From: Ruditapes philippinarum
Lineage: Eukaryota
DNA: 64,000 nucleotides
Direction of reading: 5' to 3'
Assembly: GCF_026571515.1 (NCBI RefSeq)
Contig: NW_026867228.1
Coordinates: forward strand, 124,001-188,000
Positions 9,106 through 50,675 of this stretch are shown piece after piece. Made by a program: the position numbers and the translations under genes. The number at the start of each line of letters is the position of its first letter. The stretch's first letter is position 1. The notes below the pieces were generated by a model. It was not told the origin of the DNA, ran no database searches, and was given only the letters and a program-made list of their open reading frames with translations.

Positions 9106-9109
9106 CCAA

Positions 9110-9645
9110 GTAATTTTAAAACCTTCAAAAAGTAATAGAGCGGACATGAAAAATAGATGTTTTTACATTGGACCTTTGAGTGTGATCCTGACCTTCAGTG
9201 TTTTTTTATTGATTATTGTGCTTTGCCAATGGTGTCATAATGGTGATTATTACCTTAAAACATTGCAGCAGTTTAAATGTTATGGACAGACACAAAATGT
9301 AGACATTTAAACATTTGACATGTGTGACCTTGACCTTGGGGTAGCAATTCAATTATTGCGCTCTGCACATCATCTCATAATGCCAAGCTATTTAAAAAAA
9401 TTTCAGCGGTTTAAACATGAAAGTATTACAGACAGACAGACGGACAGACAGACGTACTTACGAAATGGTACTTACGTGACTTGTCCTTTGATCTTTTTTG
9501 CCATTTTAGTCACACAAGGCTTAAAAAAAGACACACAAGTGAAAACGAAATGAATAGGATCAAAGAGAATTCACTTTACCTATTGTTCTCCAAGTCACAC
9601 AAGTACCTCTGGGTTTGTACGGACTGACAGACGTAGGTCATTCCT
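9110..9645. mobile_element. Degenerate Helentron/HINE-like repeat fragments at the left palindrome boundary
   Basis: TGACCTTGACCTT motifs and a (GACA/GACG)n microsatellite at ~9428-9454, typical of mollusc non-autonomous elements. Confidence 0.55.
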
Positions 9646-10030
9646 ATAAGAAAATTGTAATTCTTGGTACAGGGATATTATAAGAATTCATCATGCTTCA
9701 AATATTATCACAACATACATGTTTCCAAATCTAATTATCTTAAGCTATACAGTGTAGCATCATTCGTCAGGAATACATTTAAAACACCTACCATACTCTT
9801 ATAGCAACCTTCTCAAAAAACATTACCCATACCTTTTTAAAATCTGTTCTTAACTTATCTTTGCAGAAGATATCAATAGATCTAACACACAACATTGTCA
9901 CATGATAAACAACAGGAGTACAGCAAAGTTGAAAGGTCAAGATCTCTATTACTGACCGACCTTTGACCTTCATAAATGCTTATCTGGCTAGACTTCGGAT
10001 TTTTGTTGACCATCTGTGACTGCTATAATC

Positions 10031-13000
10031 TCATAATGTATGAAGTCTTTTTCTGATGGCAGTTTCCACAATCTCCAGACTATCTCTGTCTAGTTCTTTT
10101 ACAAGAAGCACTGCTTGTAACACATGGGCATTCTGAAAATAAGAAAAATATGCACATTTTATAAAGAGCTAGGTTCACTAACCATGGATTTTTGCCCAAT
10201 ATTTTGCCAAAAAATAATTTGATGCAAAGTTCTTGTTTTTAGGTTTTATTTAGTAGTTCAATCCTTAAACTCTTCAAAACATATAAATTTATAGACATAT
10301 GTTTACATTTAGTATGATTTATGTTCTATGGAAATACCCCTATTTCCAGCAAAATTAAGAAAATTCACGTATTTTTGGTGTTTTAAACGAAAATTAAAGT
10401 ATCAGCACAGTCCAGTCCCAACAAAATCATTACACCATTGATTTGTAATGTATCTAAGGCTTCAACTATAATATAAAGTTGGGGCTTGCCTGTGCTCTAT
10501 TCCAAAATTAGATTTTTACCTCATATCTTAACGTCATTTTTTTACATTTATTTCATTAAATGCAAACCATGGAGCATGTATACTGCACTCAACATTATTA
10601 ATTTTTGTTCTTACTTGTTGAAATATGATTCATAACATACATTTTAATAAATGTTGGCAGGAAAATCATTTCTAGCAAATTAAAGGCACTTTCACTAAAA
10701 TGATTACGATTATGTTTTGGTACGAGTTCGACCGGTTTCCACTGTAACGGTTGTGAACAAAACTCTGACATGTTAAAAGAAATATATGTAAACGTTTATA
10801 AATAAATGTTGAAATTCTGTTTATGCCTTAAATATTTCATTCTTAGAATTAGCAAGGTGTTGTTATGTAATTGTATTGATTCATTGAAAGACGTTATGCT
10901 GTTCAGGCTATTTCATTGCTGATCGCGAATACTTGATCTGGGTCCGGTTCTTTCGCCCTCACAAATAACAACAACAACAAAAAACAACTGTGGTCGTTTA
11001 AACACAGTGATTAAGAGGTTTTCATGTCTTTTTAAAAGGTAGATTAGAAGAATTCAATTTACTTTGTGAAAATAAAATTATTGAAAGTCTCAAAATAATT
11101 AAAAAATGCTGTATGTAGAGTATTTAAACTCTATAATTCCACATCGTCTGCATTGATGTATATGTAAAACTACTTGTTAAATGATGTTATGTCATCTCGG
11201 AATATTGCGTTAGCTCAGTGGTAGCATGGGAGCCTCTCACCCAGAATATTTGAGTTAAAACCTTGATCATGATTTTTTTTTCTTTTTTTTTTCTTTTTTT
11301 ACATTTTCTTTTTCATAATTAACAAAATAGATGGTGCTTTTTTCAGAAAATATTAATTTATTCCTTGAGATATTTAGCATTTCTAATCGGTGCTACCTCA
11401 TAATTATTAAGGTATTAAAGTTGTGTTAGACATTTGATTGCTTAACAGTTCAGCAAAAAGTTATAAATCTTATTAATTTAGTATTATTCTCATTAAAAAA
11501 ATATTCACAAGAAATTGACAAAGCAGGAAATATGTTAGGAGTCAACGGACGAAATGTGTTCAGTAGACCTTCCCAGGATGAGAAAGAAGCAGCATGGTAT
11601 TAAGCTTTAGCTGTTTCCAAGAAATACTAGACAAAAAGTCTTGACTTGTCCTTCCTCACAAAGGATCCTTTTATTTTGTGCACGAAATTGCAGACCATAC
11701 ATGAAAGCAGCCATAACTACATGAATTGGATTATCTACATGAATGACAGCATTGGTGCGTATTACTGCATTTTGGTGGTTGGTGCACGTGTAGTTTGAAT
11801 TTGTTTCGATGTCTCCACCGTTACATGGTACCTCGCATATGGATATCTTGAGGAGTGATGAGACTCGGTCAGCAGTGAGAAATTGGGCTGACAATCTTGC
11901 TGATCATGTAGCTGTATTTTGAAATTGATAGCCATTTAATACAGTGTGAAAGATAATTGTTAAAAGTAACAGTAAAAGAGACAATGCTAAACTAAATTTT
12001 AATTGTAGGCTTCCTTATGTTAAATGTTTAATTTACAACCATTATATAGATGTAAGGGCATACTGGAATGATATAAACCAAATCTTACTTAGGTTCTATG
12101 TCACATAAGTTATGGATACATGTAAATAAATGTTGTTTTTTTTCTCAGTTCTCATTTCGTCATGGATCATTACATTTCAATTGTAATAGAAGTCTGATTT
12201 CCAAAATTATAAATAACATAAATAGTTGTCTGTATTTGGCTGTATCATAATTCAAAAAAGAAAATAGTATCGTATTTGCAGTTCAGTATCAAATATTACG
12301 TATACTCCGAAAGAGCATACAGGCAAACATTATTATTACTTGACAAAACTAGAAATGTGTCCAAAGGACACGGATGCCCCCACTGACAACATATATATGG
12401 TATATAGTGAAAAAATCAACAAAGGGCCATAATTCTGTTAAATTTGGTCGCAGCAAAAATTACTTCCTTCACTAAGGTTGTTCATCCCTGGAAGTTTAAG
12501 CAAAATCTGCCACCCGGTTTAAAGCAGCACGCCTTCAGATTCATGTTAATTTTCATAAAAATTTTGAAAATGTATTTAAAAGTAAAATAATGTGAGGTGA
12601 ACAAATAAAGTAATTTACATATTGCAATCGGCACTTACAACATGTACAATCCACGAAAATTACCAAAAAGTGGCCAACATATGCAAAAACAGCCCTTACT
12701 GCGTTAGTAACGCAACAGAAGTATGGTGATAAAATACTGCAAAATTAGCGTTAAACCCAACATAATATGTAAAATATAACTTGGACCTTGAATGTTTTAT
12801 CCTTTCTTAAAACTTTAGTGCATTTTTCTCATTATTGATTTTATTGAAATATTTTGGCTCATCTGGAGGCATGCAGCTTAAAGAGGAGTTGCGTTCACAA
12901 AATTTCTATATGGTATATAGTGAACAAATCAACAAAGGGCCATAATTGTGTTAAATTTGGTCGCAGCGAAAATTCCTTCCTTAATTTACTACCATCTACA

Positions 13001-16000
13001 CATTAAGGTTGTTCATCCCTGGAAGTTTAAGTAAAGTCTGCCATATCCGGTTTAAGAGGAGTTGCGTTCACAAGATTTCGGGACGTACGGACAGACGTAC
13101 GGACAAGTGCAACGCTATATGCTCCCCACTTTGTGGTAGCATAAAAATTCTAACAAACTTTTATATCTATAAATTTACTTGATTAAGGCGAACTTTTACA
13201 CTATACATTGGAATAAGTCAACAACTCCTAGTATTAACATACTATTTGTTTACATATAATGTTACATAGTTTATGTTTAGTGTAAGTTAGACATAAATAC
13301 CTATCTGTTTTGTGTATTAATAATAATAATAATAATGATATCATTATTATTATTTATTACTATTATTATTATTATTATTATTATTATGTTCAACGTCCTT
13401 GTCCAAAGACTGACTAAAACAGGACATTAAAATTGCGATTGATTCTATACACCCTTATTTTTAGCATAAGGTAAGAAGTAGATGAATAAAACAAACAAAT
13501 TCGACATTTATTATTAAAAAATGAAAAATGAACAAACTTACAGTATTTATTAAAATAAAAATAAATATATTTAGTTAGGCGAAAAATAATATGCATGCAC
13601 ATATTTATTTCTAAATATCCGAATTTGGAATATCCGAAATGAGCCCCATTAATCTTTTATATTAGTTTTGCGACACAAAAGCCTAATTTTAACTAAACTA
13701 TAATTTTGTTTACAGTATATAAGCAATATATTGCTATCTTTATGAGTTTATTTCAGTCAAACACACAAATTTGTTAGTGTTGTATGAAAATTGTCGTCAT
13801 ATTTGTGATTTAATTGAATTAAACAGGTGTTATAATTAGGACGCCATTATGTCGTCATAGTAACCAGAGCTGCCTAATCAATGTCTATTTTGAAAATGTA
13901 ACACATTGTACTATACATCTTTAGGTTTTTATCAATATCTAAGATGGGGCCATTTTTGGTGCTAAGTGAACCTTGCTCTTACTCCAAAGCAGGTGCAAAA
14001 CCAGAATTATTTACCACAGGGGGTTGCAAAAATGGGTAATGCATATTCCAAAGAGAACCTGACATTTTAATAGTTTTCAGTGAAAATTTGACTGATTTTA
14101 ACTAGTTTTTTTTTTGCATGATGACTAGATAGCTCCCCCTAGACCTCACATGCAAAGCTTTTATTCAATATTGGACAAGATGATATAAATGATACAAAAG
14201 GATGAGCAGCTACCAAGCATCCTTATGTCAATGTCAAATTTGCAGCTGATCAATAAATAAGGGAAAGATTGAAATCATAAATTAATGCCGTTATCTATAT
14301 TTATGGAAAACAAATGTGTTAAATTTATAATTTTGAAATTATCCACAACATATTTTATAAAGATTTGCTAGTCTTACCCTGGTCCTGGTAGAATGAGTAG
14401 GTGCAGATTTCGGTGAGCCTATTTTCTCTATAGGTAACGGCTTTAAGCCTTGTTGTTCTCGTATGTTACTGAAAATAAAACATCAGGAAAACACTTGATA
14501 AAAGTTATAAGAAATTAATGCAAAGCATGTCAATACTAATATAAATTCTCCTGTGGAAACATTTTATTACATTCTGCAAGAAGCCTACTTGCAAGTTTTA
14601 TTGGATCATACAGTAACTGTTAAGGTCATATTAAAGATCAAAAGTACATGCTTAGTACAACTGTTCACTTTCAATTTTCATTGCAAGTTATAACTTAAAC
14701 TTTAAATCATTTCACAAAAAAAACCATAAAAACCACCTCCAAAGTTATCTCCTAGTATGAAATTCACAATCACATATATAGTATTATATCTTTGTGTCAC
14801 AGTGACATCTTACACTTTCAAAAAGTGAAAAGTATATCAGTAAACAAAACTAACAATCTGAAGAGGCGTAGCTGGGGCAATTTTAAATGTAAATACACAT
14901 TTTCACAGAGGAGGTCAAGGAATAGATACAATATATTTTAATATAAAATAAAAAAAAATATATGGTCTTTTTCATAAATGAGGAATTTTTCATTGTGTAC
15001 CTTGCCTGCAGCCCCGGATACCACTAGGTTCTTTTAAAATCATTTTTCACATTGAAATGATTTTCTAATTTTTTACCTCTCAGAATGAATTGTACGAATG
15101 TATGTATTTGGCGTATAAGCAGCTACGCCACAGAATTGAATTATTAACTTACTTTGTTTCCTCCCAGCTTAATGTCACTGGATCTTTTGGTAATTTTTTC
15201 ATATCATTACTTTCTGAATCTCCACCAGCAATTGCCTCCCCATTGCTCACTGGCTTTTCTTCACTGGGTTCACTCCCTTGGTCTTGATCAGGCAGTGAGA
15301 GTTCCTCCCCTTGATTTTTAGCAGCAGTTTTCTCACCATCCTTTATAACTGTAATAAACAAGACTAATATAAATATGTATGATTTTAAGTTTACAAAAAG
15401 GGACATACATGTAAGTAGCAACAAGCACTGTTTGTCTTCCTTGTGCAAGAATCAAAATGATTAATGTTTATTAAGAAGAGCTTAGGCCTAGTAGATAAGG
15501 CGTTAGCCTCTTGACCCAGAAAACCAAGCAGGGTTTATGACCGATTTCGTTTCCTCAAAATTATGGAACCAGTATTGATTATTTCAAAAAATGTGGTCTC
15601 AAGAATGGTTTAAATAAGTTTACCTGTAAGCTTTGTCCTTATTTTGACTGAAGCTAATGGACACTAGTAAATAAATATATACAGACCCTGGTATGACAAC
15701 AAACATGCTCCTACTTTAAAACTTACCAATATAATCAAGCTTTTGTAACTGAGGTAAATTTCTGATCACTGTCATTCTATAGTTGTCCCCCACCGCACAA
15801 GGATTATCTGAGAGCCAAAGGATGCGTAACTTTTCCAAGCCTTTAAGATAGCATATATCTGTTAACTCCTGTATTTTATTATTCCTTATGTACAGTTCTT
15901 GTAGGTTCTCACATACTTCAAACTCTTTCAAAGTAATGATGTCATTTACACTGAAATAAATACAGGAAAATTAAACATGAACATTTTAACAGATAGAAGC

Positions 16001-17296
16001 AGTTACCAGAATAATCAAGATATTTAACAGATCTATGTCTGGTTAACTCACAAATAGCTTTCAATAATAGATAAAACTGAATGCATTTGATCAGTTTCAT
16101 TATTAATTACTAAATTTACCAATATCATTTATAAAGGCAGTAAACACACATACATAGATAACTATTTACATCTCTGGTTAACACAATGAAAATTGATCTT
16201 ATAACTTCAAAATCATATTCTTATGAGGACTTAATAACAACAACTGTTAACAAAACAGCCTTTTTTCAATTAAAAAATGAGTATTACCTGACACTACATA
16301 TTTCTAAATTTGGCATTTCTCTTACAATGCTGATATCATCTATCTCTGAACCCCTGAAATATAAAGTTTATAATCACAGTGTGAAATATAAGGATACTCA
16401 GTGTGATCAGGGTCTTTCAAATAGAATGGTCTGGACTTAGACCAATTTTACAACAAAAAGATGTCGCGGCTGAGTCCCTTGATTAAGTTATCTATCGATA
16501 GTGATGTACATCACTGTTCAAAAATCAAATTATAAGATTACTGTTTATTCGATCAAAAATAAGTTGGTTACTCATTTACTGAAAACTAATCCTGGCTACA
16601 TTACATTATCATTTTTTACTTTAAAAAGTAACAATTTTATAAAAATAGAAGCATCGACATGTGTTACATTTTCTAGCAGTCACAGATAATATAAATACCG
16701 TGATATCATAGAACCCATGATATCATATGAATTGAGTATATTTAATTTGCGCCCTGTTCTTGAACACTTACATAAAATGACTGTGCATACACCTGTTCAC
16801 TGTATAGCAAACTATACCGAGTCATACCACGTGTTTAATTGTAGCGAGGATTTACACTGTGCGTTTCCAAACTTCTATTTGAAAGACCCTTGTTTGATTA
16901 AAATTTGACCATCCATGGTTGGAATGTCGGACGTTTCACTCCCACTAAAAATGCTTTACTCCCAGAGTAGTGTACACCTAGACATTTCATTCCAAATATT
17001 TACATGTAATTTTGAGATATTGAATTGGTAAAAAAATAAACAAATTTACTTTCATTAATGCATGTTTGTTAAAATGATAATTTAACTGTCAACTGCCCGG
17101 ACGGATTTATATCCGAATGTTGCGTACTTAACCTTATGCTACTAGAAAAAAGTTATTATTCTGAAATTTATATAAAACACCATCTTTAAACGTACCAGCA
17201 ATTAAGCTTTCGAACACTTTCAAGATCAGGAGCTCGAGTACGAGCCAAAACAATAGGACCTGTCAAACTGTTCAATGTTGCACTGGCACCAGAGTC
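10031..17296 (-). CDS. CFAP410: Cilia- and flagella-associated protein 410 (C21orf2), copy A; start codon uncertain, possibly degenerating
   Basis: GT-AG exons at 17296-17196, 16353-16288, 15950-15727, 15348-15153, 14468-14378 and 10132-10031 keep frame. They give ...[49 protein letters not shown]...LQELYIRNNKI...LRILWLSDNPC...YRMTVIRNLPQLQKLD... and a C-terminal NAHVLQAVLLVKELDRDSLEIVETAIRKRL, matching the CFAP410 LRR, LRR-cap and C-terminal helix. There is no in-frame ATG in the first exon. A candidate ATG|GT micro-exon ends at 17594. Confidence 0.85.
12348..13146. mobile_element. Helentron/HINE-like element nested in the 3.8-kb element
   Basis: Starts AACTAGAAATGTGTCCAAAGGACAC, has two internal repeat units (...AAAGGGCCATAATT...), a GACG/GACA microsatellite and a terminal hairpin CCACTTTGTGG. 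Confidence 0.75.
12523..12878. mobile_element. MITE at a TTAA target (Kolobok/piggyBac-like), nested in the Helentron-like element
   Basis: TIRs AGCAGCACGCCTTCAGAT and ATCTGGAGGCATGCAGCT. The sister repeat unit shows the empty site CCGGTTTAAGAGGAG at ~13047. Confidence 0.75.
14861..15133. mobile_element. hAT-like MITE, left arm only
   Basis: TIR-like ends GAGGCGTAGCTG and CAGCTACGCCAC; absent from the mirror intron. Confidence 0.6.
16408..16891. mobile_element. hAT-like MITE shared by both arms (mirror at 46301-46889)
   Basis: TIR CAGGGTCTTTCAAATAGAA; degenerate 8-bp flanks AGTGTGAT and TGTTTGAT. Confidence 0.7.
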
Positions 17297-17588
17297 CTAA
17301 AATAATCATAAATACCCATATAACACAAACTGCCCGAAATATTATCCGAAAAAAATTGCAGACACACCCCCGTATATATACTGTCATATATAGTTTTCAC
17401 ATGGTATTGAACCTTTTCGACAGTGGGTACGATCTAACATTCCAACTGCAAAAGGGAGATAAACACCGGTCTCGATTCATAGAATAAACATTTATCTACA
17501 ATGCTGGTAAACAATAATTTCTCAACTTTTACCGTTCCTACATTTTTTATCGAAATTCTCACTTTTGTTTTTTTCGCAGAAAGCTTCT

Positions 17589-17600
17589 GTTACCATAAAC
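17589..17600. promoter_or_regulatory. RFX X-box-like motif upstream of CFAP410-A
   Basis: GTTACCATAAAC resembles the X-box (GTTNCCATGGNAAC) known from ciliary gene promoters. The match is imperfect and overlaps the candidate ATG micro-exon. Confidence 0.35.
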
Positions 17601-17793
17601 TTGCGGTTTAGTTGTTGTTGTTGTTGTGGTCGATTTGTTACAATACCGTTCAGCTGAACCTACACATTCGCAATTTTAAAAGCAGTTTTCAAAAGGAACA
17701 CTCTATCGTCTTTATATAACCGCTAAATTCTTCTACGTGGCGATATACTATTATAAATAAAATCTTTGATAAGAACATTTAAACGTGCAACTG

Positions 17794-18126
17794 CACATTA
17801 TGCCTCAGAAATCAATATTTACTTAATTCTTTAGAAATGTTAAACACCTCTTTAATAATGTTTTAATAATGGATTTGTGCAGCTGAATGATGTAGTGCTA
17901 ATTGTGCATTAATGTGTTGTAAAGGTAGCAAAACTGTAAATAAAACAGCATTTTGACTTCCATACAAAATACTTATTCATTATAATTATACTAATTGCCA
18001 ACAAAGCAAAATATGCAAATATAGAACTTTAATCCTTATGGAAAATGAGTATTTTAGCAAGATACCAAACATTTACGTTTCTTTACATGAAAAAACTTTA
18101 GCATTTCTGGCATAAGAGGTCTTTAA
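17794..18126. mobile_element. MITE of the GCACATTATGCCTCAGAAAT family (mirror at ~42118-42452)
   Basis: Same TIR and body as the copies at ~48400-48780 and ~60408-60724. Confidence 0.7.
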
Positions 18127-18877
18127 ATAAATGATAGGCCTTTTACATAAACGATTTATCCAAGGCAAGAAAGTTATAAACGTTATAGCTATAAAACAAA
18201 ACATTTTAGAAAATTACAACATATGTTTCACGTATTGCACTATATTACTGGTTTTCCGAACATTCACAATTCTCTTTCAAATTCTACACACGGCATTTAT
18301 CTCAGCTTAAATATCGGTATCATTGTGAAACCAAGAATGTTATCTTATGTGCATAACTGTGTTCTTTTGTTCCCTGCACTCTGAATACAGTTTTTCATTT
18401 ATATATGATTATTACAGATTACAACATAAATTTTGCCAACAGACATTTTCTTACTTTACTTCGCTTTTGATTTCCAGTTGACTTGAGATTTTAAAATAAT
18501 TATCTTAAAATGAATGAGGCATGGACAACAGAAATAGGGAAAAAACTAAGAACTGTCTGAGTTTGAGAACTCTTGGCATGGTTTTAAAATGTATAAGCGA
18601 TTTATAATAAGATTTAAACATTATCGTACGTTCAAAACAATTTGATAATGCACATGCAGGCTATCATTTTTTGAAAATCAGGTGAAGGTAGTGGTGTTTG
18701 GTTGTTTTCACTCTCACTATACGGATCACGGCAGTAAACCACATTGAATTCACCAGAGCACTGTTTATCCACCACATTATTCCTGGATAGGATGTCAAGT
18801 TAGCTCCCTTCGCATTTTTATTCTTATTTTCCCTTTTTATTGTGAAACATTTGACCGATGCACAGGAGTGTGTATAT

Positions 18878-19047
18878 ATTAAGCAGTCTTACCAGTTACA
18901 GTTGCCTTCGCTTTCCACAAGGAACTGAAACTTCTGTGATCGTTGAAAGGATTTCGTGATCACTACGTAACTGGCTTGCCGTCCTGGATCGAACCCGGCC
19001 ACACGATTTACAGTCCAACGCTCTACTTAAAAGGGTAACCGGACGGC
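18878..19047 (-). mobile_element. Degenerate tRNA-derived SINE (Meta-domain-like); mirror at ~41195-41365
   Basis: tRNA-like head GCCGTCC...GTAGAGCGTTGGACTGTAAATC...GGGTTCGATCCAGGACGGC, followed by GATCACGAAATCCTTTCAACGATCA...CAGTTCCTTGTGGAAAG...ACTGGTAAGACTGCTTAA. Confidence 0.5.
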
Positions 19048-19486
19048 TAGTGCTTTTTTTCTAAAAATGATGAAATACTACTTATTCTTACCGTTAATCG
19101 TTATAATATTAATTAATTGCTAACATGTTATCTTGTTAAATAAATTAAAATTATTGTTAAAAACAAAATGTCTCATATTTAATTCTTTGTTCAGATTTTG
19201 AAAAAAATCGACCCGATGTATATATATCAAACATACCGGACAGTTCGCCGAGTTGTTACTGTCGACCCCTTTGAAACGCTTTTGCAATTGACGTCACTAA
19301 AGTTCCGTAAATTTTCCCCTTGCTAGTATAAATCTCGTATTCGCAGTCTTTAAATTGCCTGCACATGTTGAAAACGAATGGCCTGGTGCCCGAATAATTT
19401 TCCTTTAATAATTGATTTGTATGTATCTGAAGGAGCATTGATAATATATAGGCAAACTTTACACTACCGTTTTTTTAGCAAACGTC

Positions 19487-19838
19487 TGATTAATTGATTT
19501 ATTCGATTGATTCGGGGTAATGGATAGCCTACGAAAGTGCAAGCACTTATTTCCAGTAGGGTCCTCACCTAAGTAGACACTAGAGACAGCTTTGAGATAC
19601 AAAGGAATCCGGGAACCTGTCCCTAGCTCTTATTGAATAGAAGATCCCTTGGTTCTTTTGTATGCCCAGTGTGTAGCACTGATACATGCGAGGATTACCT
19701 GGGTTTCGTACCAGTTTACCTCTAGGGAAGTTGGAAGCACTGATAGTGTTTCTGAAAAATCCCAAGGGTGTTACCCAGGATCGAACCCGGAACCTCAGGA
19801 GTTACAGTCAGTGGTCTAACCAACTGAGCTATCGCGCC
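19487..19838 (-). mobile_element. tRNA-derived SINE (V-domain-like body, CR1-like tail), left-arm copy
   Basis: A box TAGCTCAGTTGG, B box GGTTCGATCC, body CACACTGGGCATACAAAAGAACC, tail GGACCCTACTGGAAATAAG...GGCTATCC and a degenerate (AATC)n end. Confidence 0.8.
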
Positions 19839-40419: not shown

Positions 40420-40760
40420 GGCGCGATAGCTCAGTTGGTTAGACCACTGACTGTAACTCCTGAGGTTCCGGGTTCGATCCTGGGTAACACCCTTGGGATT
40501 TTTCAGAAACACTATCAGTGCTTCCCACTTCCCTAGAGGTAGACTGGTACGAAACCCAGGTAATCCTCGCATGCTACACACTGGGCATGCAAAAGAACCA
40601 AGGGATCTATTCAATAAGAGCTAGGGACAGGTTCCCGGATTCCTTTGAATCTCAAAGCTGTCTCTAGTGTCTGCTTAGGTGAGGACCCTACTGGAAATAA
40701 GCGCTTGCACTTTCGTAGGCTATCCATTACCCAGAATCAATCGAATAAATCAATTAATCA
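40420..40760 (+). mobile_element. tRNA-derived SINE (V-domain-like), right-arm copy
   Basis: Mirror of 19487-19838 with the same A/B boxes and tail. Confidence 0.8.
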
Positions 40761-42638
40761 GACGTTTGCTAAAAAAACGGTAGTGTAAAGTTTGCCAATA
40801 TATTATCAATGCTCCTTCAGATACATACGAATCAATTATTAAAGGACAATTATTCGGGCACCAGGCCATTCGTTTTCAACATGTGCAGGCAATTTAAAGA
40901 CTGCGAATCCGAGATTTATACTAGCAAGGGGAAAATTTACGGAACTTTAGTGACGTCAATTGCAAAAGCGTTTCAAAGGGGTCGACAGTAACAAGTCGGC
41001 GAACTGTCCGGTATGTTTGATATATATACATCGGGTCGATTTTTTCAAATCTGAACAAAGAATTAAATATGAGACATTTGTTTTTAACAATAATTTTAAT
41101 TTATTTAACAAGATAACATGTTAGCAATTAATTAATATTATAACGATTAACGGTAAGAATAAGTAGTATTTCATCATTTTAGAAAAAAGCACTAGCCGTC
41201 CGGTTACCCTTTTAAGTAGAGCGTTGGACTGTTAATCGTGTGGCCGGGTTCGATCCAGGACGGCAAGCCAGTTACGTAGTGATCACGAAATCCTTTCAAC
41301 GATCACAGAAGTTTCAGTTCCTTGTGGAAAGCGAAGGCAACTGTAACTGGTAAGACTGCTTAATATATACACACTCCTGCGCATCGGTCAAATGTTTCAC
41401 AATAAAAAGGGAAAATATGAATAAAAATGCGAAGGGAGCTAACTTGACATCCTATCCAGGAATAATGTGGTGGATAAACAGTGCTCTGGTGAATTCAATG
41501 TGGTTTACTGCCGTGATCCGTATAGTGAGAGTGAAAACAACTAAACACCACTACCTTCGCCTGATTTTCAAAAAATGATAGCCTGCATGTGCATTATCAA
41601 ATTGTTTTGAACGTACAATAATGTTTAAATCTTATTATCAATCGCTTTAACATTTTAAGACCATGTCAAGAGTTCTCAAACTCAGACAGTTCTTAGTTTT
41701 TTTCCCTATTTCTGTTGTCAATGCCTCATTCATTTTAAGATTACTATTTTAAAATGTCAAGTCAACTGGAAATCAAAAGCGAAGTAAAGTAAGAAAATGT
41801 TTGTTGGCAAAATTTATGTTGCAATCTATAATACTCATATATAAATGAAAAACGGTATTCAGAATGCAGGGAACAAAAGAACACAGTTATGCACATAAGA
41901 TAACATTCTTGGTTTTACAATGATACCGATATTTAAGCTGAGATAAATGCCGTGTGTAGAATTTAAAAGAGAATTGTGAATGTTCGGAAAACCAGTAATA
42001 TAATGCAATACGTGAAACATATGTTGTAATTTTCTAAAATGTTTTGTTTTATAGCTATAACGTTTATGTATTTCTTGCCTAGGATAAATCATTTATGTAA
42101 AGGCCTATCATTTATTTAAAGACCTAGCTCTTATGCCAGAAATGCTAAAGTTTTTTCATGAAAAAAAAAACCGTAAATGTTTGGTATCTTGCTAAAATAC
42201 TTATGCCATAAGGATGAACTATATTTGCATCTTTTGCTTTGTTGGCAATTAGTATAATTATAATGAATAAGTATTTTGTATGGAAGTAAAAATGCTGCTT
42301 TATTTACAGTTTTGCTACCTTTACAACACATTAATGCACAATTAGCACTACATCATTTAGCTGCACAAATCCATTATTAAACCATTATTAAAGAGGTGTT
42401 TTGCATTTCTAAAGAATTAAGTAAATATTGATTTCTGAGGCATAATGTGCAGTTGCACGTTTTAATGTTCTTATCAACGATTTTATTTATAATAGTATAT
42501 CGCCACTTCTTTTTGGTTAAGTTTAACTCTCAGCAACGCAGAAGAATTTAGCGATTATATAAAGACGGCGTTCTTTGCACTGTACATAGAGTGTTCCATT
42601 TGAAAATGCGAATGTGTAGGTTCAGCTGAGCGGTATTG

Positions 42639-45600
42639 GTACCATTTGGATGAATTTTGAGAACGAGAAAGAATACACCAGATACATATAATAAGTATAA
42701 AGACCTTTATACGACGCGGTCCTTTGCTGTGAAAAAATTGACCGGAAGTGGTATATTCTTGCGCATGCGCAATCTGCATAGGGCAAAAAAAAGAACATCA
42801 CCCTACATGGAAATGTAGTAGATGTTCGTAGACAATTCGGATTTAGTTAAAAATAAATAGAAAATCATATAAAATGGCCTGACGTTGATATAATTGTTGT
42901 AAAAAGGGTGGGAATATAAATATTAGCAAATAAAGAAGTCAGTTAATTTTTTTTTTTTGAAATCTTTCAAAGAAATTCTATAACATATAAAATAGAGGTT
43001 AATTATAATTCTGAAAACAGTCGGACACGTGAAAATGCATTTCATTGTTCAGTTATAATTGTATCCTTTATCCTACTGCCAAACAGAATTTCCATATCAT
43101 AATTAAATATATCTAAAAACAATTCAAAATCTTGAGAAGTTAAGATTGCAAGTGAAATAACAAAATGCTTCAATACTGATGAAACTTGGCACAAATGTTG
43201 ATTGGACTAACAGCATGCTCAATCTTAAATTTCCTGTTACCATGGCAACGGGGGGACTTCTCAAAGTTGCCAAAAATAACTATTTTGCATTTTCTTTCAT
43301 CAAAACTGATTTCAAAGTGCTGCAACTTCTCAATGGATTGAGATGGAATAAATGGTTTTTCAGCGTTTGTTACGCGTTCGCCCATTCTCAATAAAATAAA
43401 GCATTTGAGGTTGAAAAATATTAAAAATTTGATGTTGTCATTGTGTCATTTTTTATCGCTGAAGTAAAAGTTTAGGGTATTTTGCAAGTTTGCCAGAAAT
43501 ATTTTGAACAAGAAACTATGATATAACAGGATGGCATTTATTTCGGTAATGACACTGTATTTCTTCGGTAACGTAGAATTCAGATCTAATAATGTAACAT
43601 ATTGGCTGCATATTAATAACAAATGTCTGTAAAATATATCAAAATCTGTAAATTCTCTAACTAGAGGGACTTACTAACCCAGGAAAATTCAAAGAAGTTA
43701 GGTACCTTGCTTATTTTCAGTCAATTTCTTCAAAGTTAAATATCCGTAGAAAGCAAAAATAGTCAATTTTGGAAATGATTATTTCATGTCTTCATTCAAA
43801 GGATATATATCATATATAATATATGAGAGGTCGAATGCATACACAAATTTTGTATTAGCATTTTTTTTCTCAAAATATTCAACTTTCCACTTTCTTAATA
43901 TTTGGAAAATTTAGTACTAAGCAGTTCGATATTTATCCCCATATAGGATGTCACGTATGTTTCATTTTATTCAAATGCAAGTAAAGGTTGAGAAAACAAT
44001 TTCATTTTTTGTAAAATGATTTATATTTATGGATAGTATTTTAACATTATTATATATAGAATGAAATACGGCCAGTAAGCTCTTTGCAGAAACGAAATAG
44101 TTGTTGCTGAGAACATCAATATCTTGTAATATATTTTTAACATTTCTGCCGGTACATCAACATATTGTTAACATATCTTTCCTTTGTAAAAACAATTTTG
44201 TGTCTTCTTACAGCTAATACAATGTAACCGTTACTAACAGGCATGCTAATCCCAACTTTATCTTTAATTTTCAAAAATTGTTGAATTGTAAGTTGGAGTA
44301 ACGTATGTTTCACACTCGCTTATTTATAAACTTTATCATGGAATTTAAACTTACATGTAAAATCGACTTTTTTTTATTAGGAATCAAATGCACATCATTC
44401 TATTGTCATAAAAATGCGATTTTATGTTTTTATATATGCATGTGTAAACAATATAAAGTCTGTTTGATAAAAGTAACGTTTGTTTCACTGTGGTTACTTA
44501 AACAAGTAAAAACTCGACCAAAGTTAACAAAATTTACTTACTAAGGTCAAATAGAAGTTAATGTTGCTGTTATACGTGCTTTCTGACTTCAATTTCCCTT
44601 TTGATAAACTTACATTAAAAAGTTGATAACGTATGTTTCTGTAACATATGTTTCATTTTAACATTGAAAATGGGCTTAAAATGACGCAAGACCGTTTAAG
44701 CCGCCATAATTTGTGGTTAATATATCAGAGTTACACACATGTTAATTTTCTTTTTTGTTTGGATACTTCTTTAAATGGATTGGCTCTTAAATAATGGTAA
44801 CGTATGTTTCTTTTTAAAGTGCTGTTGAAAAGATTTGAATAAAAAATGAAAATTTCCGAAAATAGAATGATATTTGAGAGGCTGCAAGCTTATTTTTACT
44901 TATTATTATATATATGCTGTATTATTAAGCATGCATCGATTCAATTATGTAATTTGGGTTTCACTTCTAATTGTTTTAGGTTTGTCACTATTTATTTATA
45001 TGCCTTTGGCGACATTTGATCATCCATTATACCAATGAGATTTTAACAGTCAAATATAATTTTTACCAATAATCAAAGTGCATATACGCACAACAATGAC
45101 TAATTGCACATGTTTCGTTTATTCTAAAACTTATTTTTCTGAAACACAATTTCAAAGTTGAAAATTCTAGGTGGCGACAGTAACGTATGTTACATTTTAG
45201 GGCATTAATGGTACTTGTAAAAGAAAAATAACAGATAGAAATGTAAAACTGAGAGTGTCCCTATTAGACAAAGTGGCAGCCACCTTTCTAACGACATTTT
45301 GACCTCAAGAAAAACCTTCGTATAAGAGCTACCCAGTGGAACATCAAATGCTGTGTTTTATTGAGAATGAGCGGTTACCTTACGATCGACCTGAGGCCAT
45401 TTTTAGCCTGTCACATGTCCAAATTTTTTTTGGCGATTGACCCCCTTCAAACCCCCGAAACAGAAGGGGGCACATCCTCCTTCTGGCAACCCCCTAATCT
45501 ACAGTTTTGATAGGGGTGGCGCCGAAAAAGGTGATCACTTTTTTAAGAACATTTCCCAAACGAAAAACTGTGTTTGGGGTCTAAATATGGTAATTTTTCA

Positions 45601-45931
45601 CTGTTTGAGGCCTCAAAAAAGGAGGGGGTCGAAAAGCCGTCAAACACGTCTATATGAGGTAAAATGTTAAGTTTCCTAAAATGTAGTATTTCGTAATGCG
45701 TTTTTGCCCTACTTAGTCATAATAGCAAAGTTACAGCCAGTTACAGCCAAAAAAATGAAAATTTCAATAATTTGACCTTCAAAGTAAAGGTCATTTATGA
45801 GTGAATGTCAAGGTCTGTCTGGTTATTTTTAAGGGTTATCCTTGAAGATTATTATGTTCAAGTATATATATGAAATACCGCATACGTTGAACAGGATTTA
45901 GCAATGCAATAACTTCCGGTCAAAATGGAAA
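42639..45931. mobile_element. ~3.3-kb right-arm-only insert with nested imperfect inverted ends (putative non-autonomous DNA transposon)
   Basis: Occupies the slot of 17281-17640 in the left arm. TTGACCGGAAGT (~42738) pairs with ACTTCCGGTCAA (45912), and TAGGGCAAAAA (42779) pairs with TTTTTGCCCTA (45701). It has a repeated ACGTATGTTTC motif and TE-typical ATGAAACTTGGCACA and TTTGACCTT...AAGGTCA strings. Confidence 0.6.
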
Positions 45932-48900
45932 CAACATTGAACAGTTTGACAGGTCCTATTGTTTTGGCTCGTACTCGAGCTCCTGATCTTGAAAGTGTTC
46001 GAAAGCTTAATTGCTGGTACGTTTAAAGATGTTGTTTTATATTTCAGAATAATAAAATTTTCCAAGTATCATAAAATTATTTTAAGTACGCAACATTCGG
46101 ATATAAATCCGTCCGGATAGTTGACAGTTTAATTATCATTTAAACAAACGAACATTAATGAAAGTAGATTTGTTTATTTTTTACCTATTTAATATCTCAA
46201 AATTACATGTATATATTTGGAATGAAATGTCTAGGTGTACAATGCTCTGGGAGTAAAACATTTTTAGTGGGAGTGAAACGTCCGACAATTTTAATATAAC
46301 CAGGGTCTTTCAAATAGAATGGTTTGGAAATGCACGGGTTAAATCCTCGCTTCAATTAAAAATGTCGCGGTATGACTTGGTATAGTTTGCTATATATATA
46401 TACACATTTTATGTAAGTGTTGAAGAACAGGGTGCAAATTAAATATACTCAATCACAGGTGCTTGAAACAAACTTTTTAAAGTTTTATATGGGCTATATA
46501 TACTATAATAAGATATACATATATAGACCGGTTATGTAAAATATTTGATTATGTGACTAGCGCCTGTGTACTCAATTCTTATGATATCACAGTATTTACA
46601 TTTTCTGTGACTGCTAGAAAATGTAAATGTAACACATATCGATGCTTCTATTTTTATTAAATTGTTACTTTTTAAAGTAAAAACTGATAATGTAATGTAG
46701 CCAGGATTAGTTTTCAGTAATTTTTGATCAAATAAACAGAAATCTTATACTTTGATTTTTGAACAGTGGTGTGCTACACCAGATAACTATCGATAGATAC
46801 AAATGTAACTTAATCATGTGACTCAGCTGAGACATCTTCAATGTCGTAAAATTGGTCCAACTCCAGACCATTCTATTTGAAAGACCCTGATCAAACTGAG
46901 TATCTTCATATTCCACACTGTGATTATAAACTTTATATTTCAGGGGTTCAGAGATAGATGATATCAGCATTGTGAGAGAAATGCCAAATTTAGAAATATG
47001 TAGTGTCAGGTAATCAATCTATTCATTTTTTAATGAAAAAAGGCAGTTGTTGCCTTGTGGGTGAAAGTGGTTTTGTCAAACTACCGGTTTAGCGAACTTA
47101 TCTTATGTAATAAAAAGGTTGTGGTTTCGGAGAACTTATTTTATAGTGTTAAAAATATCTATTGTATACTGGGCACGTCAATTATGGTATGTGTTAATTT
47201 GTAAAGAAAACGTTGATACAAAAATAAATATCTTTTAATATATAACATAAGATTGACACACCTCTTCATAAATTAAGTTCCCCGAACCGGTTGTTCGCTG
47301 GAACCACCATAATTCTGCCTTGTTCACAGTTGTTGCTATTAAATCTTAAATAAGTATCTGAAATTAGGAGATAAATTGTCATTGTGTTTGCCTTTAGAAA
47401 TGATATCCGTAAATTTAGTATTTAGCAATGAAACTGATCAAATGCATTTAGTTCTGTCTTTTATTGAAAGCTTTTTAAGAGTATTGTTAATCAGACTTCT
47501 ACATTTTGTATCTTGATTATTCTTGTCACTGTTACAACTATTAAAATGGTTATTAATGCAAATTTTCCTGTATTTCAGTGTTAACGATATCACAACCTTG
47601 AAAGACTTTGAAGCATGTGAGAATCTACAAGAACTGTACATAAGGAATAATAAAATACAGGAGTTAACAGATATATGCTACCTTAAAGGCTTGGAAAAGT
47701 TACGCATCCTTTGGCTCTCAGATAATCCTTGTGCGGTGGGGGACAACTATAGAATGACTGTCATCAGAAATTTACCTCAGTTACAAAAGCTTGATAATGT
47801 TGGTAAGTTTTAAAGTAGGAGCATGTTTGTTGTCATACCAGGGTCTGTATACATTTATTTACTAGTGTCCATTAGTTTCAGTCAAAATAGACCTTCATAA
47901 GGACAAAGCTTACAGATAAACTTTCTTGAGACAACTTCTTTGAACTTATCAATATTGGTGCCATAGTTATGAGGAAACGAAATAGGTCATAAACCCTGCT
48001 TGATTTTTTTGGGTAAAGAGACAAACACCTTATCTACTAGGCCAAGGCTCTCCTCAATAAACATTAATTATTTTGAGTCTTGCAAAGGAAGGCAAACAGT
48101 GCTTGTCGCTACTTTTGTCCCTTTTTGTAAACTTAAAATCATACATATTTATATTAGTCTTGTTTATTACAGTTGTAGAGGATGATGAGAAAACTGCTGC
48201 TAAAGAACAGGGGGAGGAACTCTCACTGCCTGATCCAGACCAAGGGAGTGAACCCAGTGAAGAAAAGCCAGTGATCAATGGCGAAGCAATTGCTGGTGGA
48301 GATTCAGAAAGTAATGATGTGAAAAAATTACCAAAAGATCCAGTAACATTAAGCTGGGAGGAAACAAAGTAAATTAATAATTCAAGTTTTTAGTTTTGTT
48401 TAAAGGCACATTATGCCTCAGAAATCTATGAATATATTTAATTCTGTAGAAATGTCACACATGTGTTTAATTATGTTTAAATAAAGGATTAAGTGTGTGT
48501 TAGATGTTTAACAAGTGGAAAAAAAGTAGCGCTGAACATGTCATGCAGTTATGTGTTGTAACAATAGCAAAATATAAGCAAAGTAGTATTTTGACATCCA
48601 TACCATACAAAATCGTAATTCATTATAATTATATCAATTGTCAACAGAACTAAAGGTGGAAGAAAAGTTAGTTCATGTACATAGCAAATGAGTATGCTTT
48701 GGGAAATTGTAACAAGATACCAAAAGTAAAAGTTTTTGAGAAATAAAAATGATAGCATTTCTGAGGCATAATGGGCCTCACTTTTTGAAAATGTAAGATG
48801 TCACTGTGACAGCAAGATGAAATACTACATGTGATTGAGAATTTCATAAAAGTAGATAACTTTAGAGGTGGTTCCTTATGTTTTTTTCCCATGGATTGAT

Positions 48901-49939
48901 TTAAAGTTTTAGTTACAACTTGCAATGAATTTATTAGAAAAATGGAAATGAACAGTTGCACTAGATGTGTTCTTTTGACCTTTAATATGACCTTAACTGT
49001 GTTGTGTGATCCAATAAAACTTGCAAGTTCTCAGATAGGCTTCTTGCAGAATGTAATAAAATTTTGCCACAGGATAATGATAATTTATATTAGTATTGAC
49101 GTGCTTTGCATTAAGTTCTTATAACTTTTATCAAGTGTTTTTCTGATGTTTTATTTTCAGTAAAATACGAGAACAGCTAGGCTTAAAACCGTTACCAATA
49201 GAGAAAATAGGCTCACCTAAATCTGCACCTACACATTCTACCAGGACCAGAGTAAGACTAGCATTTTTTTGAAAAATACGTAGTGGATAATTCTAAAATT
49301 ATAAATGCAACACATTTTGTTGTTTTCCTTAAATAACGGCATTATCTTATGATTTCAATGATACACTTATTTATTGATCAGCTGCGAATTTGACACTGAC
49401 ATAAGGCTGCTTATATGGTTGGTAGTTGCTCATCCCTTTATATTGTTTATATCATGTCCAATATTGAATAGATGCTTTATTTGTGAGTCCACAAGGGAGC
49501 TAGGGAGTCATCATGCAAAAAAAAACTAGTTAAAATCAGCCAAATTTTCACTCATGGTCGACTCTTGAAAACTTTATATCATTTATATCATGTCCAATAT
49601 TGAATAGATGCTTTATTTGTGAGGTCCACAGGTGAGCTAGGGAGTCGTCGTGCAAAAAAACTAGTTAAAATCAGCCAAATTTTCACTCATGGCTGACTCT
49701 TGAAAACTAGTTAAATGTCAGGTTCTCTTTGGAATATGCATTACCCATTGTTGCAACCCCCTGTGGTAAATAATTCTGGATCTGCACCTGCTTTGGAGTA
49801 ATTTATAAATTGTGCATATTTTTCTTATTTTCAGAATGCCCATGTGTTACAGGCAGTGCTCATTCTTGTAAAAGAACTGGACAGAGATAGTCTGGAGATC
49901 GTGGAAACTGCCATCAGAAAAAGACTTGACACATTATGA
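45925..49939 (+). CDS. CFAP410: Cilia- and flagella-associated protein 410 (C21orf2), copy B, 257 aa
   Basis: Exons 45925-46016, 46944-47009, 47579-47802, 48173-48368, 49161-49251 and 49835-49939 total 774 nt, are all GT-AG and stay in frame. Protein reads METTLNSLTGPIVLARTRAPDLESVRKLNCWGS...LQKLDNV...NAHVLQAVLILVKELDRDSLEIVETAIRKRLDTL*. Confidence 0.93.
46301..46889. mobile_element. hAT-like MITE in CFAP410-B intron 1
   Basis: Perfect TIR CAGGGTCTTTCAAATAGAATGG and CCATTCTATTTGAAAGACCCTG. Confidence 0.75.
47062..47312. mobile_element. MITE in CFAP410-B intron 2, right arm only
   Basis: Imperfect inverted ends GTGGTT...ACCGGTT...GAACTTA and TAAGTTC...AACCGGT...AACCAC; absent from the mirror intron. 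Confidence 0.55.
48400..48780. mobile_element. TTAA-targeting MITE in CFAP410-B intron 4, right arm only
   Basis: TTAA-AGGCACATTATGCCTCAGAAAT at the left end and ATTTCTGAGGCATAATGGGCCT at the right end. Confidence 0.75.
49445..49705. repeat. ~130-bp local tandem duplication in CFAP410-B intron 5
   Basis: TTTATATCATGTCCAATATTG...GACTCTTGAAAACT occurs twice in a row, but once in the mirror intron. Confidence 0.8.
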
Positions 49940-50675
49940 GATTAAAGCAGTCACACATGGTCAACAAAAATCCAAAGTCTAGCCAGATAAACATTTATGA
50001 AGGTCAAAGGCCGGTCAGTTATATTGAACTTGACCTTTCAACTTTGCTGTACTCCTGTTGTTTATCATGTGACAATGTTGTGTGTTATATCTATTGATAT
50101 CTTCTGCAAAGATAAGAGGTTAAGAACAGATTTTACAAAGGTATGGGTAATGTTTTTTGAGAAGGCTGCTATAAGAGTATGGTAGGTGTTTTAAAATGTA
50201 TTGCTGATGAATGACGCTACACTGTATGGCTTTAGGTAATTTGATTTGGAAACATGTATGTTGAGATAATATTTGAAGCATAATGAATTCTTGAATTATC
50301 ACTGTATCAAGAGATACATTGTTCTTTCATCAGGTCAGTTATTCTCAATATGTAGCAATGAGCTAAAATCTTGTGCATTGTTAGTCTGGTATACAAAAAC
50401 TAGTTTTACATTCATAAGGCATATACTGAAGCTTAATTACTAGAAACCAGTCGAACTGAACTAATGTTGTATTCTATACAAAACATGTTCCATGCCCAAT
50501 TGGTGTATCTTTATAATATACAAAATGTATGTGCTAATTTTTACATTGTTGTATACAGGTTTATATTTTACATATAAAACTTAAAGTATATAGTATAATT
50601 TGATGTAATACTGCTGTGATAAAAGGAATATATATTTGTTCTGCAGATATAAGACATAATATCTTAATCAACCAA

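What the first reader, a model, noticed from the sequence alone, without database searches (positions are those of the whole stretch)
9645..50330. ~40-kb gene-bearing palindrome: CFAP410 < C1q > [spacer] < C1q > CFAP410
Seen: two ~19-21-kb arms in inverted orientation around a ~1-kb spacer, each with a complete C1q gene and a CFAP410 gene. At least seven arm-specific insertions sit alongside shared SINEs and MITEs. Established: large gene-carrying palindromes are best known from sex chromosomes and fold-back amplification, and C1q genes are massively expanded in bivalves. Inference: this is a persistent inverted duplication that produced a new immune-lectin paralogue and carried along a normally single-copy ciliary gene. 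The main alternative is two haplotypes joined in inverted orientation by the assembler. The low identity of some introns argues against that but does not exclude it.
Basis: partly seen in the sequence, partly recalled or inferred. Interest (0 to 1): 0.85.

Follow-up and report, generated by a model that had tools for sequence, protein, structure and literature searches.

The report
Real gene-bearing palindrome in Manila clam
A 40.7-kb stretch of the Manila clam genome is a real, old mirror-image duplication carrying two immune C1q genes and two copies of the ciliary gene CFAP410; its inner half appears to be kept alike by copying between the two arms. It is a sound new example of a known kind of structure, not a new kind.

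Summary
In Ruditapes philippinarum contig C15715 the left arm (9648-30733) and right arm (50326-31712) are inverted around a 978-bp spacer (30734-31711). The spacer is flanked by inverted arrays of a ~135-bp satellite. Each arm holds an intact 3-exon C1q gene pointing at the centre and a 6-exon CFAP410 gene pointing outward.

It is not two haplotypes misjoined:
- Homology stops at 9648/50326.
- The CFAP410 copies differ by dS 0.17.
- The arms carry different nested transposons.
- These are the only two CFAP410 loci in the 1.41-Gb assembly.
- Contigs from public runs of other samples bridge both spacer junctions.

Arm identity is strongly uneven: 86-93% over CFAP410 and 94-98.6% over the inner C1q half. 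A second, decayed C1q palindrome sits on contig C15338. Arms of the same locus group together (146 informative sites against 17 and 15). Both window arms share two insertions that C15338 lacks. The best reading is an old palindrome whose inner part is homogenised by arm-to-arm gene conversion.

The right CFAP410 is the conserved copy. The left one lost the ancestral start codon, uses a repeat-supplied splice acceptor, and carries every derived amino-acid change that could be polarised. The C1q twins diverge mainly in their C1q-domain exon (omega about 0.9).

Kind: palindromic segmental duplication. Interest is moderate.

The parts
9648..30733 (.). Left arm of the palindrome (21.1 kb, including left-only insertions)
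   Evidence: Self-BLAST and colinear chain. No homology outside 9648.
31712..50326 (.). Right arm of the palindrome (18.6 kb, including right-only insertions)
30734..31711 (.). Spacer, 978 bp. The full length occurs once in the assembly, but its first ~350 bp belong to a dispersed repeat family.
   Evidence: Inverted pair I3. Genome search. Contigs of other samples bridge both of its ends.
29830..30733 (+). Left array of the ~135-bp satellite (7 units). One more unit at 26635-26790 is split off by the left-only insertion.
   Evidence: Direct-repeat families D1, D4, D6.
31712..32645 (-). Right array of the same ~135-bp satellite, inverted; 96-97% complementary in register to the left array
   Evidence: Family D2 and inverted pairs I2, I3, I6.
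26791..29829 (.). Left-only 3-kb insertion of high-copy repeat inside the satellite, with ~200-220-bp internal tandem units
   Evidence: Chain gap. Families D7, D8. Word depth in the thousands against tens in the spacer. Its junction at 29830 is bridged by a contig of run X1.
23433..24452 (+). Left C1q gene, 3 exons (23433-23459, 23695-23746, 24055-24452), 158 aa; identical to RefSeq XP_060578276.1
   Evidence: Pfam C1q 1.4e-18. P0001 is 100% identical. ATG and GT/AG sites read directly.
34812..35808 (-). Right C1q gene, 3 exons in mirror position. It has an intact ORF and canonical splice sites and is 82.6% identical to the left copy over the C1q-domain exon.
   Evidence: Pfam C1q 9e-17..
45925..49939 (+). 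Right CFAP410 gene, 6 exons, ancestral-type start; identical to RefSeq XP_060578273.1 (257 aa). This is the conserved copy.
   Evidence: tblastn of orthologues and of P0278. Exon contexts. C-terminal exon matches PDB 8AXR, CFAP410, E 0.0016.
10031..18777 (-). Left CFAP410 gene. It has the same six exons (17296/17275-17195, 16352-16290, 15961-15728, ~15363-15152, 14470-14378, 10132-10031) but no ancestral ATG. The RefSeq model XP_060578271.1 (279 aa) starts in an upstream exon at 18777-18718.
17281..17642 (.). Left-only MITE-like repeat that abuts the point where arm homology breaks. It supplies the splice acceptor and the first 16 nt of the left CFAP410 second exon.
   Evidence: Genome search shows copies at 75-90%, with terminal matches in both orientations. 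Sequence context.
42639..45931 (.). Right-only 3.3-kb segment upstream of the right CFAP410. A 2.0-kb young transposon (43379-45373; at least 39 copies at 94-98%) is nested in a SINE-like element (43162-43378 plus 45374-45670). Low-copy sequence at 45671-45931 holds the ATG.
10166..14078 (.). Left-only 3.9-kb segment in the last CFAP410 intron (the right arm has 249 bp here)
   Evidence: Chain gap.
38100..39022 (.). Right-only 923-bp insertion
19492..19850 (.). SINE-like element shared by both window arms (right copy 40408-40755) but absent from both C15338 arms and from C12234
26068..26449 (.). 382-bp segment shared by both window arms (right copy 32820-33201) but absent from C15338 and C12234

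Best explanation
This is a true, old palindromic segmental duplication in the Manila clam genome. One inverted duplication copied a block holding CFAP410 and a small secreted C1q-domain gene. The two copies face each other across a ~1-kb spacer bordered by inverted arrays of a 135-bp satellite. Since then the outer CFAP410 half of the arms has diverged freely (about 7-14% mismatches, dS 0.17) and each arm has collected its own transposons. The inner ~9-13 kb next to the centre has been repeatedly homogenised by arm-to-arm gene conversion. Large arm-specific insertions between the two halves probably act as the barrier to conversion. Within the homogenised half the C1q-domain exon stays among the most different parts, so the twin lectins are kept or driven apart while their surroundings are kept alike. 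The right CFAP410 remains the conserved ciliary gene. The left copy lost its ancestral start, is annotated with a new 5' exon spliced into a repeat-derived acceptor, and is evolving faster. Shown here: the structure, the gene content, the divergence figures, the junctions in other samples, the second palindrome, and the phylogenetic grouping of arms. Inferred: gene conversion as the cause, the barrier role of the insertions, and selection on the C1q loops.
For: Structure.

Not allelic and not an artefact:
- Homology ends at 9648/50326 with no further match in 9.6 kb and 13.7 kb of flank.
- The CFAP410 copies have dS 0.169, dN 0.029, omega 0.17.
- Only two CFAP410 exon-3 loci exist in the 1.41-Gb assembly, both in this window.
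- The arms carry different nested transposons.
- Logan contigs bridge the satellite/spacer junction at 30733/30734 in X1 and X2. They bridge 31711/31712 in X1, X2, X4 and X6 (four samples, three studies) and the satellite/right-arm transition in all four. In X2 the pieces chain from 30649 to 31791.

Concerted evolution:
- Arm identity is heterogeneous (chi-square 255, df 24): 86.5-93% outer and 94.4-98.6% inner.
- A paralogous palindrome exists on C15338.
- Quartet-informative sites are 146 for 'arms of one locus together' against 17 and 15.
- Two insertions are shared by both window arms only.
- In other samples' contigs, 10 of 17 variant letters on the right arm equal the reference left-arm state. 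Contigs in the near-identical part have about twice the depth of the spacer.

Genes.

Left CFAP410 is the derived copy: all 8 polarisable amino-acid differences and a 1-codon deletion lie on the left copy.
Against: No single long molecule spanning arm-spacer-arm was seen. The public runs served were short-read contigs, and none spans the whole 6-kb stretch. Contig depth is not a copy number, and contigs drop variants, so the 2x depth and the 'other-arm' letters are only suggestive. Some of those contigs may simply be left-arm contigs laid on the right arm. The dominance of 'same-locus' sites and the shared insertions could also come from a younger inner duplication rather than from conversion. 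A test for GC-biased conversion was not significant (odds ratio 1.49, p 0.15; pooled p 0.064). No expression data were obtained. The outgroup copy C12234 is itself mosaic.
Confidence: 0.82

Rival explanations
1. Assembly artefact: two diverged haplotypes of a single-copy locus, or a fold-back chimeric read, were joined in inverted orientation.
For: The only direct support for continuity across the whole 40 kb is the assembly itself. Bivalve genomes are highly heterozygous. No read spanning the full centre was obtained.
Against: Allelic arms would stay homologous into the flanks, but homology stops at 9648/50326. A dS of 0.17, loss of the start codon in one copy and different nested transposons are far beyond allelic differences. 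A fold-back chimera would give identical arms. Both spacer junctions occur in contigs of other samples and studies. The same architecture is seen on an independent contig. No other CFAP410 locus exists in the assembly.
Confidence: 0.03
2. Two-step origin without gene conversion: an old inverted duplication gave the CFAP410 halves. The inner C1q halves come from a later, separate inverted duplication or replacement, so they are simply younger.
For: Inner arms are 94-98.6% alike against 86-93% for the outer arms. Same-locus grouping and the two insertions shared only by the window arms fit a younger inner duplication as well as they fit conversion.
Against: It needs a second inverted duplication that landed exactly colinear with the old arms on both sides of the same centre. 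Divergence inside the inner half is itself patchy (1.4% to 9.6% per 500 columns). Clusters of sites support the other two quartet topologies (22500-23000, 21000-21500, 25000-26000). In some segments a window arm is closer to a C15338 arm than to its own partner. Variant letters in other samples often equal the other arm's state.
Confidence: 0.12
3. The C15338 palindrome is not a paralogue but the other haplotype (a haplotig) of this same locus.
For: It has the same C1q unit, the same satellite and the same inverted layout, at 87-92% identity.
Against: C15338 has no CFAP410 sequence and no flank similarity. Both of its C1q copies are broken by stops and frameshifts while both window copies are intact. 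It lacks the two insertions shared by the window arms. Its centre is a different ~4.9-kb tandem array.
Confidence: 0.03

Closest known systems
Large palindromes of mammalian X and Y chromosomes (human P1-P8, primate and mouse X palindromes)
   Same: Both have inverted arms longer than 10 kb around a short unique spacer, protein-coding gene pairs in the arms, and evidence of arm-to-arm sequence exchange. Comparators: PMC8600007, PMC8327919, bioRxiv 10.1101/800185, seen.
   Different: Those palindromes keep arm identity above 99% along their length. Here identity is 86-98.6% and only the inner half looks homogenised. The host is a bivalve with no known link to a sex chromosome. The genes are an immune lectin and a ciliary gene, not testis gene families. 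The centre is bordered by satellite arrays.
Tandem-duplication clusters of C1q-domain-containing (C1qDC) genes in bivalves (Gerdol et al. 2019, PMC6835236)
   Same: Both involve lineage-specific local duplication of small secreted C1qDC genes; more than 1200 such genes are reported for R. philippinarum in that paper. The paralogues diverge fast in the C1q head.
   Different: That paper does not use the words inverted, orientation, palindrome or gene conversion. Here the duplicates are mirror-image and centred on a satellite, they carry a non-immune neighbour gene, and their flanks evolve in concert.
Palindromic autosomal segmental duplications (for example SD12A1 on mouse chromosome 12, PMC13688818)
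   Same: [quoted passage not shown]
   Different: The scale differs (megabases against 40 kb), as do the taxon and gene content. Only the abstract of that paper was seen.

Membership tests
Palindromic (inverted) segmental duplication | Two copies of at least 1 kb in inverted orientation on one molecule, colinear, at about 90% identity or more | tested here: met
   12.7 kb of aligned columns, 94.4% identity (mismatches only), strictly colinear inverted chain.
Palindromic (inverted) segmental duplication | Bounded homology: the flanks outside the arms are not homologous | tested here: met
   A sensitive BLAST of both flanks finds nothing beyond 9648/50326.
Palindromic (inverted) segmental duplication | Physically real in the organism, not only in the assembly | tested here: inconclusive
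   Both spacer junctions and the satellite/right-arm transition are bridged by contigs of 2-4 other samples. No single molecule spanning both arms was available.
Sex-chromosome-type large palindrome | Arm-to-arm identity above 99% | tested here: not met
   86.5-98.6% by segment; the longest identical run is 308 bp.
Sex-chromosome-type large palindrome | Ongoing arm-to-arm gene conversion | tested here: inconclusive
   Supporting: heterogeneous identity; same-locus grouping 146 against 17 and 15; insertions shared by both arms only; other-arm letters in other samples. Not decisive: the GC-bias test gave p 0.15, and a younger inner duplication is not excluded.
Sex-chromosome-type large palindrome | Location on a sex chromosome and germline-specific expression of the arm genes | not testable with these tools
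C1q-domain-containing (C1qDC) protein | C1q domain (Pfam PF00386) above the gathering score | tested here: met
   67.8 and 61.9 bits against a cut-off of 23.7. PDB hits to C1q, cerebellin, adiponectin and C1q-like 3.
C1qDC protein | Complete ORF with start, canonical splice sites and stop in both copies | tested here: met
   The left copy is identical to XP_060578276.1.
CFAP410 (C21orf2) | N-terminal leucine-rich repeat region of the LRR_9 type | tested here: met
   LRR_9 at 39.9 and 38.5 bits against a cut-off of 30.5. 60-77% identity to proteins that sources name CFAP410.
CFAP410 (C21orf2) | Short conserved C-terminal helical domain | tested here: met
   The right exon 6 matches PDB 8AXR (CFAP410), E 0.0016, 30 of 33 residues aligned. 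The left copy has a one-residue deletion inside it.
CFAP410 (C21orf2) | Ancestral N-terminus and start codon | tested here: met
   Met for the right copy, which aligns from residue 1 of the oyster and scallop proteins. Not met for the left copy, which has no in-frame ATG before exon 1 because homology breaks 5 nt upstream.

The most novel reading that the evidence does not exclude
Satellite-centred palindromes may be a recurrent way of making and maintaining C1q lectin pairs in clams. The 135-bp satellite would seed inverted duplication. Arm-to-arm conversion would keep promoters and flanks alike. Diversifying selection would keep the ligand-binding loops of the twins different. Palindromes would then be copied to new loci and either diversify (this window) or decay (C15338). 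That would add a mechanism beyond tandem duplication to the more-than-1000-gene C1q expansion.
Probability: 0.15. Interest if true: 0.7.

Novelty: new member of a known kind. Interest (0 to 1): 0.42.

Why it matters
Bivalve immune-gene expansions are attributed to tandem duplication. This locus shows that mirror-image duplication with concerted evolution also occurs, and that it can drag a normally single-copy housekeeping gene along. It offers a compact natural case for three questions: how gene conversion and selection oppose each other in twin immune lectins; how transposon insertions may limit conversion tracts; and how a 5'-truncated duplicate can be re-started by a repeat-supplied splice site. 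It also warns annotators that clam CFAP410 exists as two unequal copies.

Tried and rejected
- Haplotype misjoin or fold-back chimera: rejected.
- C15338 as a haplotig of this locus: rejected.
- The left C1q-domain exon was converted from a third paralogue: no closer donor exists in the assembly. The best match is the right arm at 89%, then C15338 at 85%, and all others are at or below 79%.
The ATG at 45925 lies in low-copy sequence 255 bp past the SINE-like element and aligns with residue 1 of orthologues. It is the left copy whose 5' end is repeat-derived.
- GC-biased conversion: trend only, p 0.15.
- Pfam on ten long ORFs of the flanks and of the young transposon: no domain found.
- The first CFAP410 protein search missed the clam proteins; the second, with an oyster query, found them.
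- No structure prediction was run: the tools return no coordinates, so the two new cysteines could not be tested for proximity.
Exons were searched by reference one at a time, and dN/dS was summed over in-frame exon pieces.
Full report
**Observation.** A minus-strand self-comparison of the window gives one colinear inverted chain. Left 9648-26746 and 29934-30728 pair with right 50326-32521 and 32504-31717. The two chains meet at a 978-bp spacer, 30734-31711 (inverted pair I3: 217 nt, 96% complementary, 978 nt apart). The arms are 21.1 and 18.6 kb long. There are no N runs. The aligned part is 12,716 columns at 94.4% identity, counting mismatches only.

**Anatomy of the centre.** Each arm ends toward the centre in an array of a ~135-bp satellite: left 29830-30733, plus one unit at 26635-26790; right 31712-32645. 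The two arrays are 96-97% complementary in register. The left array is interrupted by a 3-kb left-only insertion (26791-29829). That insertion is a high-copy repeat: its word depth in public runs is in the thousands, against tens in the spacer. The full-length spacer occurs once in the 1.41-Gb assembly, but its first ~350 bp belong to a dispersed repeat family.

**C1q genes.** The organism is Ruditapes philippinarum; the window is contig C15715:124001-188000. Each arm has a three-exon C1q gene pointing toward the centre.
- Left: 23433-24452 (+), 158 aa, identical to RefSeq XP_060578276.1.
- Right: 35808-34812 (-).
- Both have an ATG, canonical GT/AG sites and a stop.

**CFAP410 genes.** Each arm also has a six-exon CFAP410 gene pointing outward.
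- Family assignment rests on three things: the LRR_9 match; 60-77% identity to proteins that sources name CFAP410 or C21orf2; and a match of the last exon to the solved C-terminal domain of CFAP410, PDB 8AXR.
- RefSeq annotates both copies: right is XP_060578273.1 (257 aa) and left is XP_060578271.1 (279 aa).
- The arms end about 380 bp past the CFAP410 stop codons.

**Is it an artefact?** No, on five independent counts.
1. Homology stops at 9648/50326. A sensitive search finds nothing more in 9.6 kb of left flank and 13.7 kb of right flank. Misjoined alleles would stay homologous.
2. The CFAP410 copies differ by dS 0.169 and dN 0.029. Their introns differ by 7-14%, and each arm has its own insertions. 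One of these is a 2-kb young transposon nested inside a SINE-like element on the right. A fold-back chimera would give identical arms, and alleles would not differ this much.
3. A six-frame search of the whole assembly with CFAP410 exon 3 finds exactly two loci, both in this window.
4. Logan contigs of four samples from three studies were laid on 27800-33800.
   - Contigs bridge 30733/30734 in X1 and X2 (188 nt, no differences).
   - Contigs bridge 31711/31712 in X1, X2, X4 and X6.
   - Contigs bridge the satellite/right-arm transition in all four, and the insertion/satellite junction at 29830 in X1.
   - In X2 the pieces chain from 30649 to 31791, across the whole spacer.
5. A second contig, C15338, carries the same C1q unit as an inverted pair ending in the same satellite.

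What is still missing is a single long molecule across both arms. All runs served were short-read contigs.

**Uneven age of the arms.** Identity is 86.5-93% over the CFAP410 half (9648-17280) and 94.4-98.6% over the inner half (17737-30728). The best stretches are at 18.5-20.6 kb and next to the centre. The heterogeneity is very strong (chi-square 255, df 24). The boundary between the two regimes coincides with the largest heterology: a 3.3-kb right-only transposon nest opposite a 362-bp left-only MITE-like element.

**The second palindrome and concerted evolution.**
- On C15338 the arms 83862-92568 and 111797-97517 (92-95% alike) face a ~4.9-kb centre made of a different tandem repeat.
- These arms correspond to window 18088-26060 at 87-92%. 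They lack CFAP410, and both of their C1q-domain exons are broken by stops and frameshifts.
- A further single copy lies on C12234.
- In a five-way alignment, parsimony-informative sites group the two window arms against the two C15338 arms 146 times. The two alternative groupings get 17 and 15 sites, and those minority sites are clustered.
- Two insertions, a SINE-like element at 19492-19850 and a 382-bp segment at 26068-26449, are present in both window arms and absent from both C15338 arms and from C12234.
- By segment, a window arm is sometimes closer to a C15338 arm than to its partner.
- In the contigs of other individuals, 10 of 17 variant letters on the right arm equal the reference state of the left arm. 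Contigs in the near-identical part have about twice the depth of spacer contigs in X1 and X6. This is only suggestive, because contig depth is not copy number and left-arm contigs can be laid on the right arm.

Together these findings fit an old palindrome whose inner part is homogenised by arm-to-arm gene conversion, with some exchange between loci. The rival is a younger inner duplication nested exactly in an older one. It is not excluded but is less economical. A test for GC-biased fixation was not significant (odds ratio 1.49, p 0.15).

**Fate of CFAP410.**
- Overall omega is 0.17, so the pair has been under constraint.
- The change is one-sided. At all 8 differences that outgroups can polarise, the right copy keeps the ancestral residue and the left copy is derived. 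These include N to Y in the invariant LDN motif and L to Q in the conserved LGLKPLP motif.
- The left copy also has a one-residue deletion in the C-terminal helix.
- The left copy has no in-frame ATG before exon 1. Arm homology breaks 5 nt upstream, where a MITE-like repeat (17281-17642) begins.
- The RefSeq model starts instead at an ATG in an upstream exon (18777-18718, GT donor). It splices into an AG acceptor inside that repeat and adds 26 new N-terminal residues.
- The right copy begins with an ATG in low-copy sequence, and this start aligns with residue 1 of oyster and scallop proteins.
- So the right copy is the conserved ciliary gene, and the left copy is a diverging or decaying duplicate. 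Whether it is expressed was not tested.

**Fate of the C1q twins.**
- The C1q-domain exon is 90% identical in nucleotides and 82.6% in protein, with dN 0.106, dS 0.116 and omega 0.92. The differences are clustered.
- The 900 bp upstream are 97.2% identical and the stretch nearest the centre 98.5%.
- The left exon is the outlier among all copies, and no closer donor exists in the assembly.
- Two of its derived changes create cysteines (G to C and T to C).
- An independent JGI protein is 94.7% identical to the right copy and differs in the same loop.
- This pattern fits diversifying or relaxed selection on the ligand-binding head against a homogenised background. With two intact copies it cannot be tested formally.

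**Comparison with what is known.** It works like the large palindromes of mammalian sex chromosomes, which have inverted arms, a short spacer, gene pairs and arm-to-arm exchange (papers listed). It fails their defining identity of more than 99%, so it is better filed as a palindromic segmental duplication with partial concerted evolution. The bivalve C1q literature found here attributes the expansion to tandem duplication. The key paper contains none of the words inverted, orientation, palindrome or gene conversion, and no paper combined bivalve, C1q and inverted duplication. The genes themselves are already in RefSeq.

**Limits.**
- No related clam genome could be searched with these tools.

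**Verdict.** The structure is real and old and carries two gene pairs. It is a new member of a known kind, of moderate interest.

Noticed in passing
G000:C15338:83862-111797 (loci L015-L018): A second C1q palindrome. Arms 83862-92568 and 111797-97517 are 92-95% alike and end in the same 135-bp satellite. The centre is ~4.9 kb of a different ~300-bp tandem repeat. Both C1q-domain exons are pseudogenised by stops and frameshifts, while the signal-peptide exon is still 100% identical to the window's left copy.
   Followed up: partly
window 17281-17642 and 18718-18777 (- strand): The left CFAP410 has lost the ancestral ATG. RefSeq XP_060578271.1 starts in an upstream exon and splices into an AG acceptor inside a MITE-like repeat, giving 26 new, rather hydrophobic N-terminal residues. 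The same upstream exon is 100% identical on the right arm (41465-41524), where it is not needed.
   Followed up: partly
window 24054-24452 (+): Two derived changes in the left C1q domain create cysteines (residues 35 and 67 of the exon-3 translation; G and T in all six other copies compared). They could form a new disulfide; proximity was not tested.
   Followed up: no
window 43379-45373: A 2.0-kb transposon with at least 39 genomic copies at 94-98% identity (7870 first-look candidates), nested in a ~520-bp SINE-like element. It is probably recently active. No Pfam domain was found in its longest ORF.
   Followed up: partly
window 18001-20000 and 40001-42000: The most alike part of the arms (97-98.6%) is also the most G+C-rich part of the window (0.356 and 0.366 against about 0.31). 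This could reflect GC-biased conversion, a promoter, or the shared SINE.
   Followed up: partly
window 47801/48172 and 15728/15349: The RefSeq CFAP410 models join exons 3 and 4 at a boundary that is not GT-AG as read here. A canonical GT donor one base later, together with an AG acceptor 14 nt upstream of the RefSeq exon-4 start, keeps the frame and adds five residues in both copies.
   Followed up: no
window 30747-31100: The first ~350 bp of the 'unique' spacer match dozens of loci at 75-88%. The spacer may therefore itself be a repeat-derived insertion into an older centre.
   Followed up: no
window 9106-9649 and 50674-51006: The left outer boundary of the palindrome abuts two repeat families (9106-9415 and 9428-9649). 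A MITE with terminal inverted repeats lies 350 bp outside the right boundary. The original left breakpoint may be hidden by insertions.
   Followed up: partly
G000:C12234:142158-152270: A single, more diverged copy (15-19%) of the C1q unit without a recognisable C1q-domain exon of this type. The 135-bp satellite lies on the opposite side, at the contig end. By segment it is closer to one or the other C15338 arm (mosaic).
   Followed up: no
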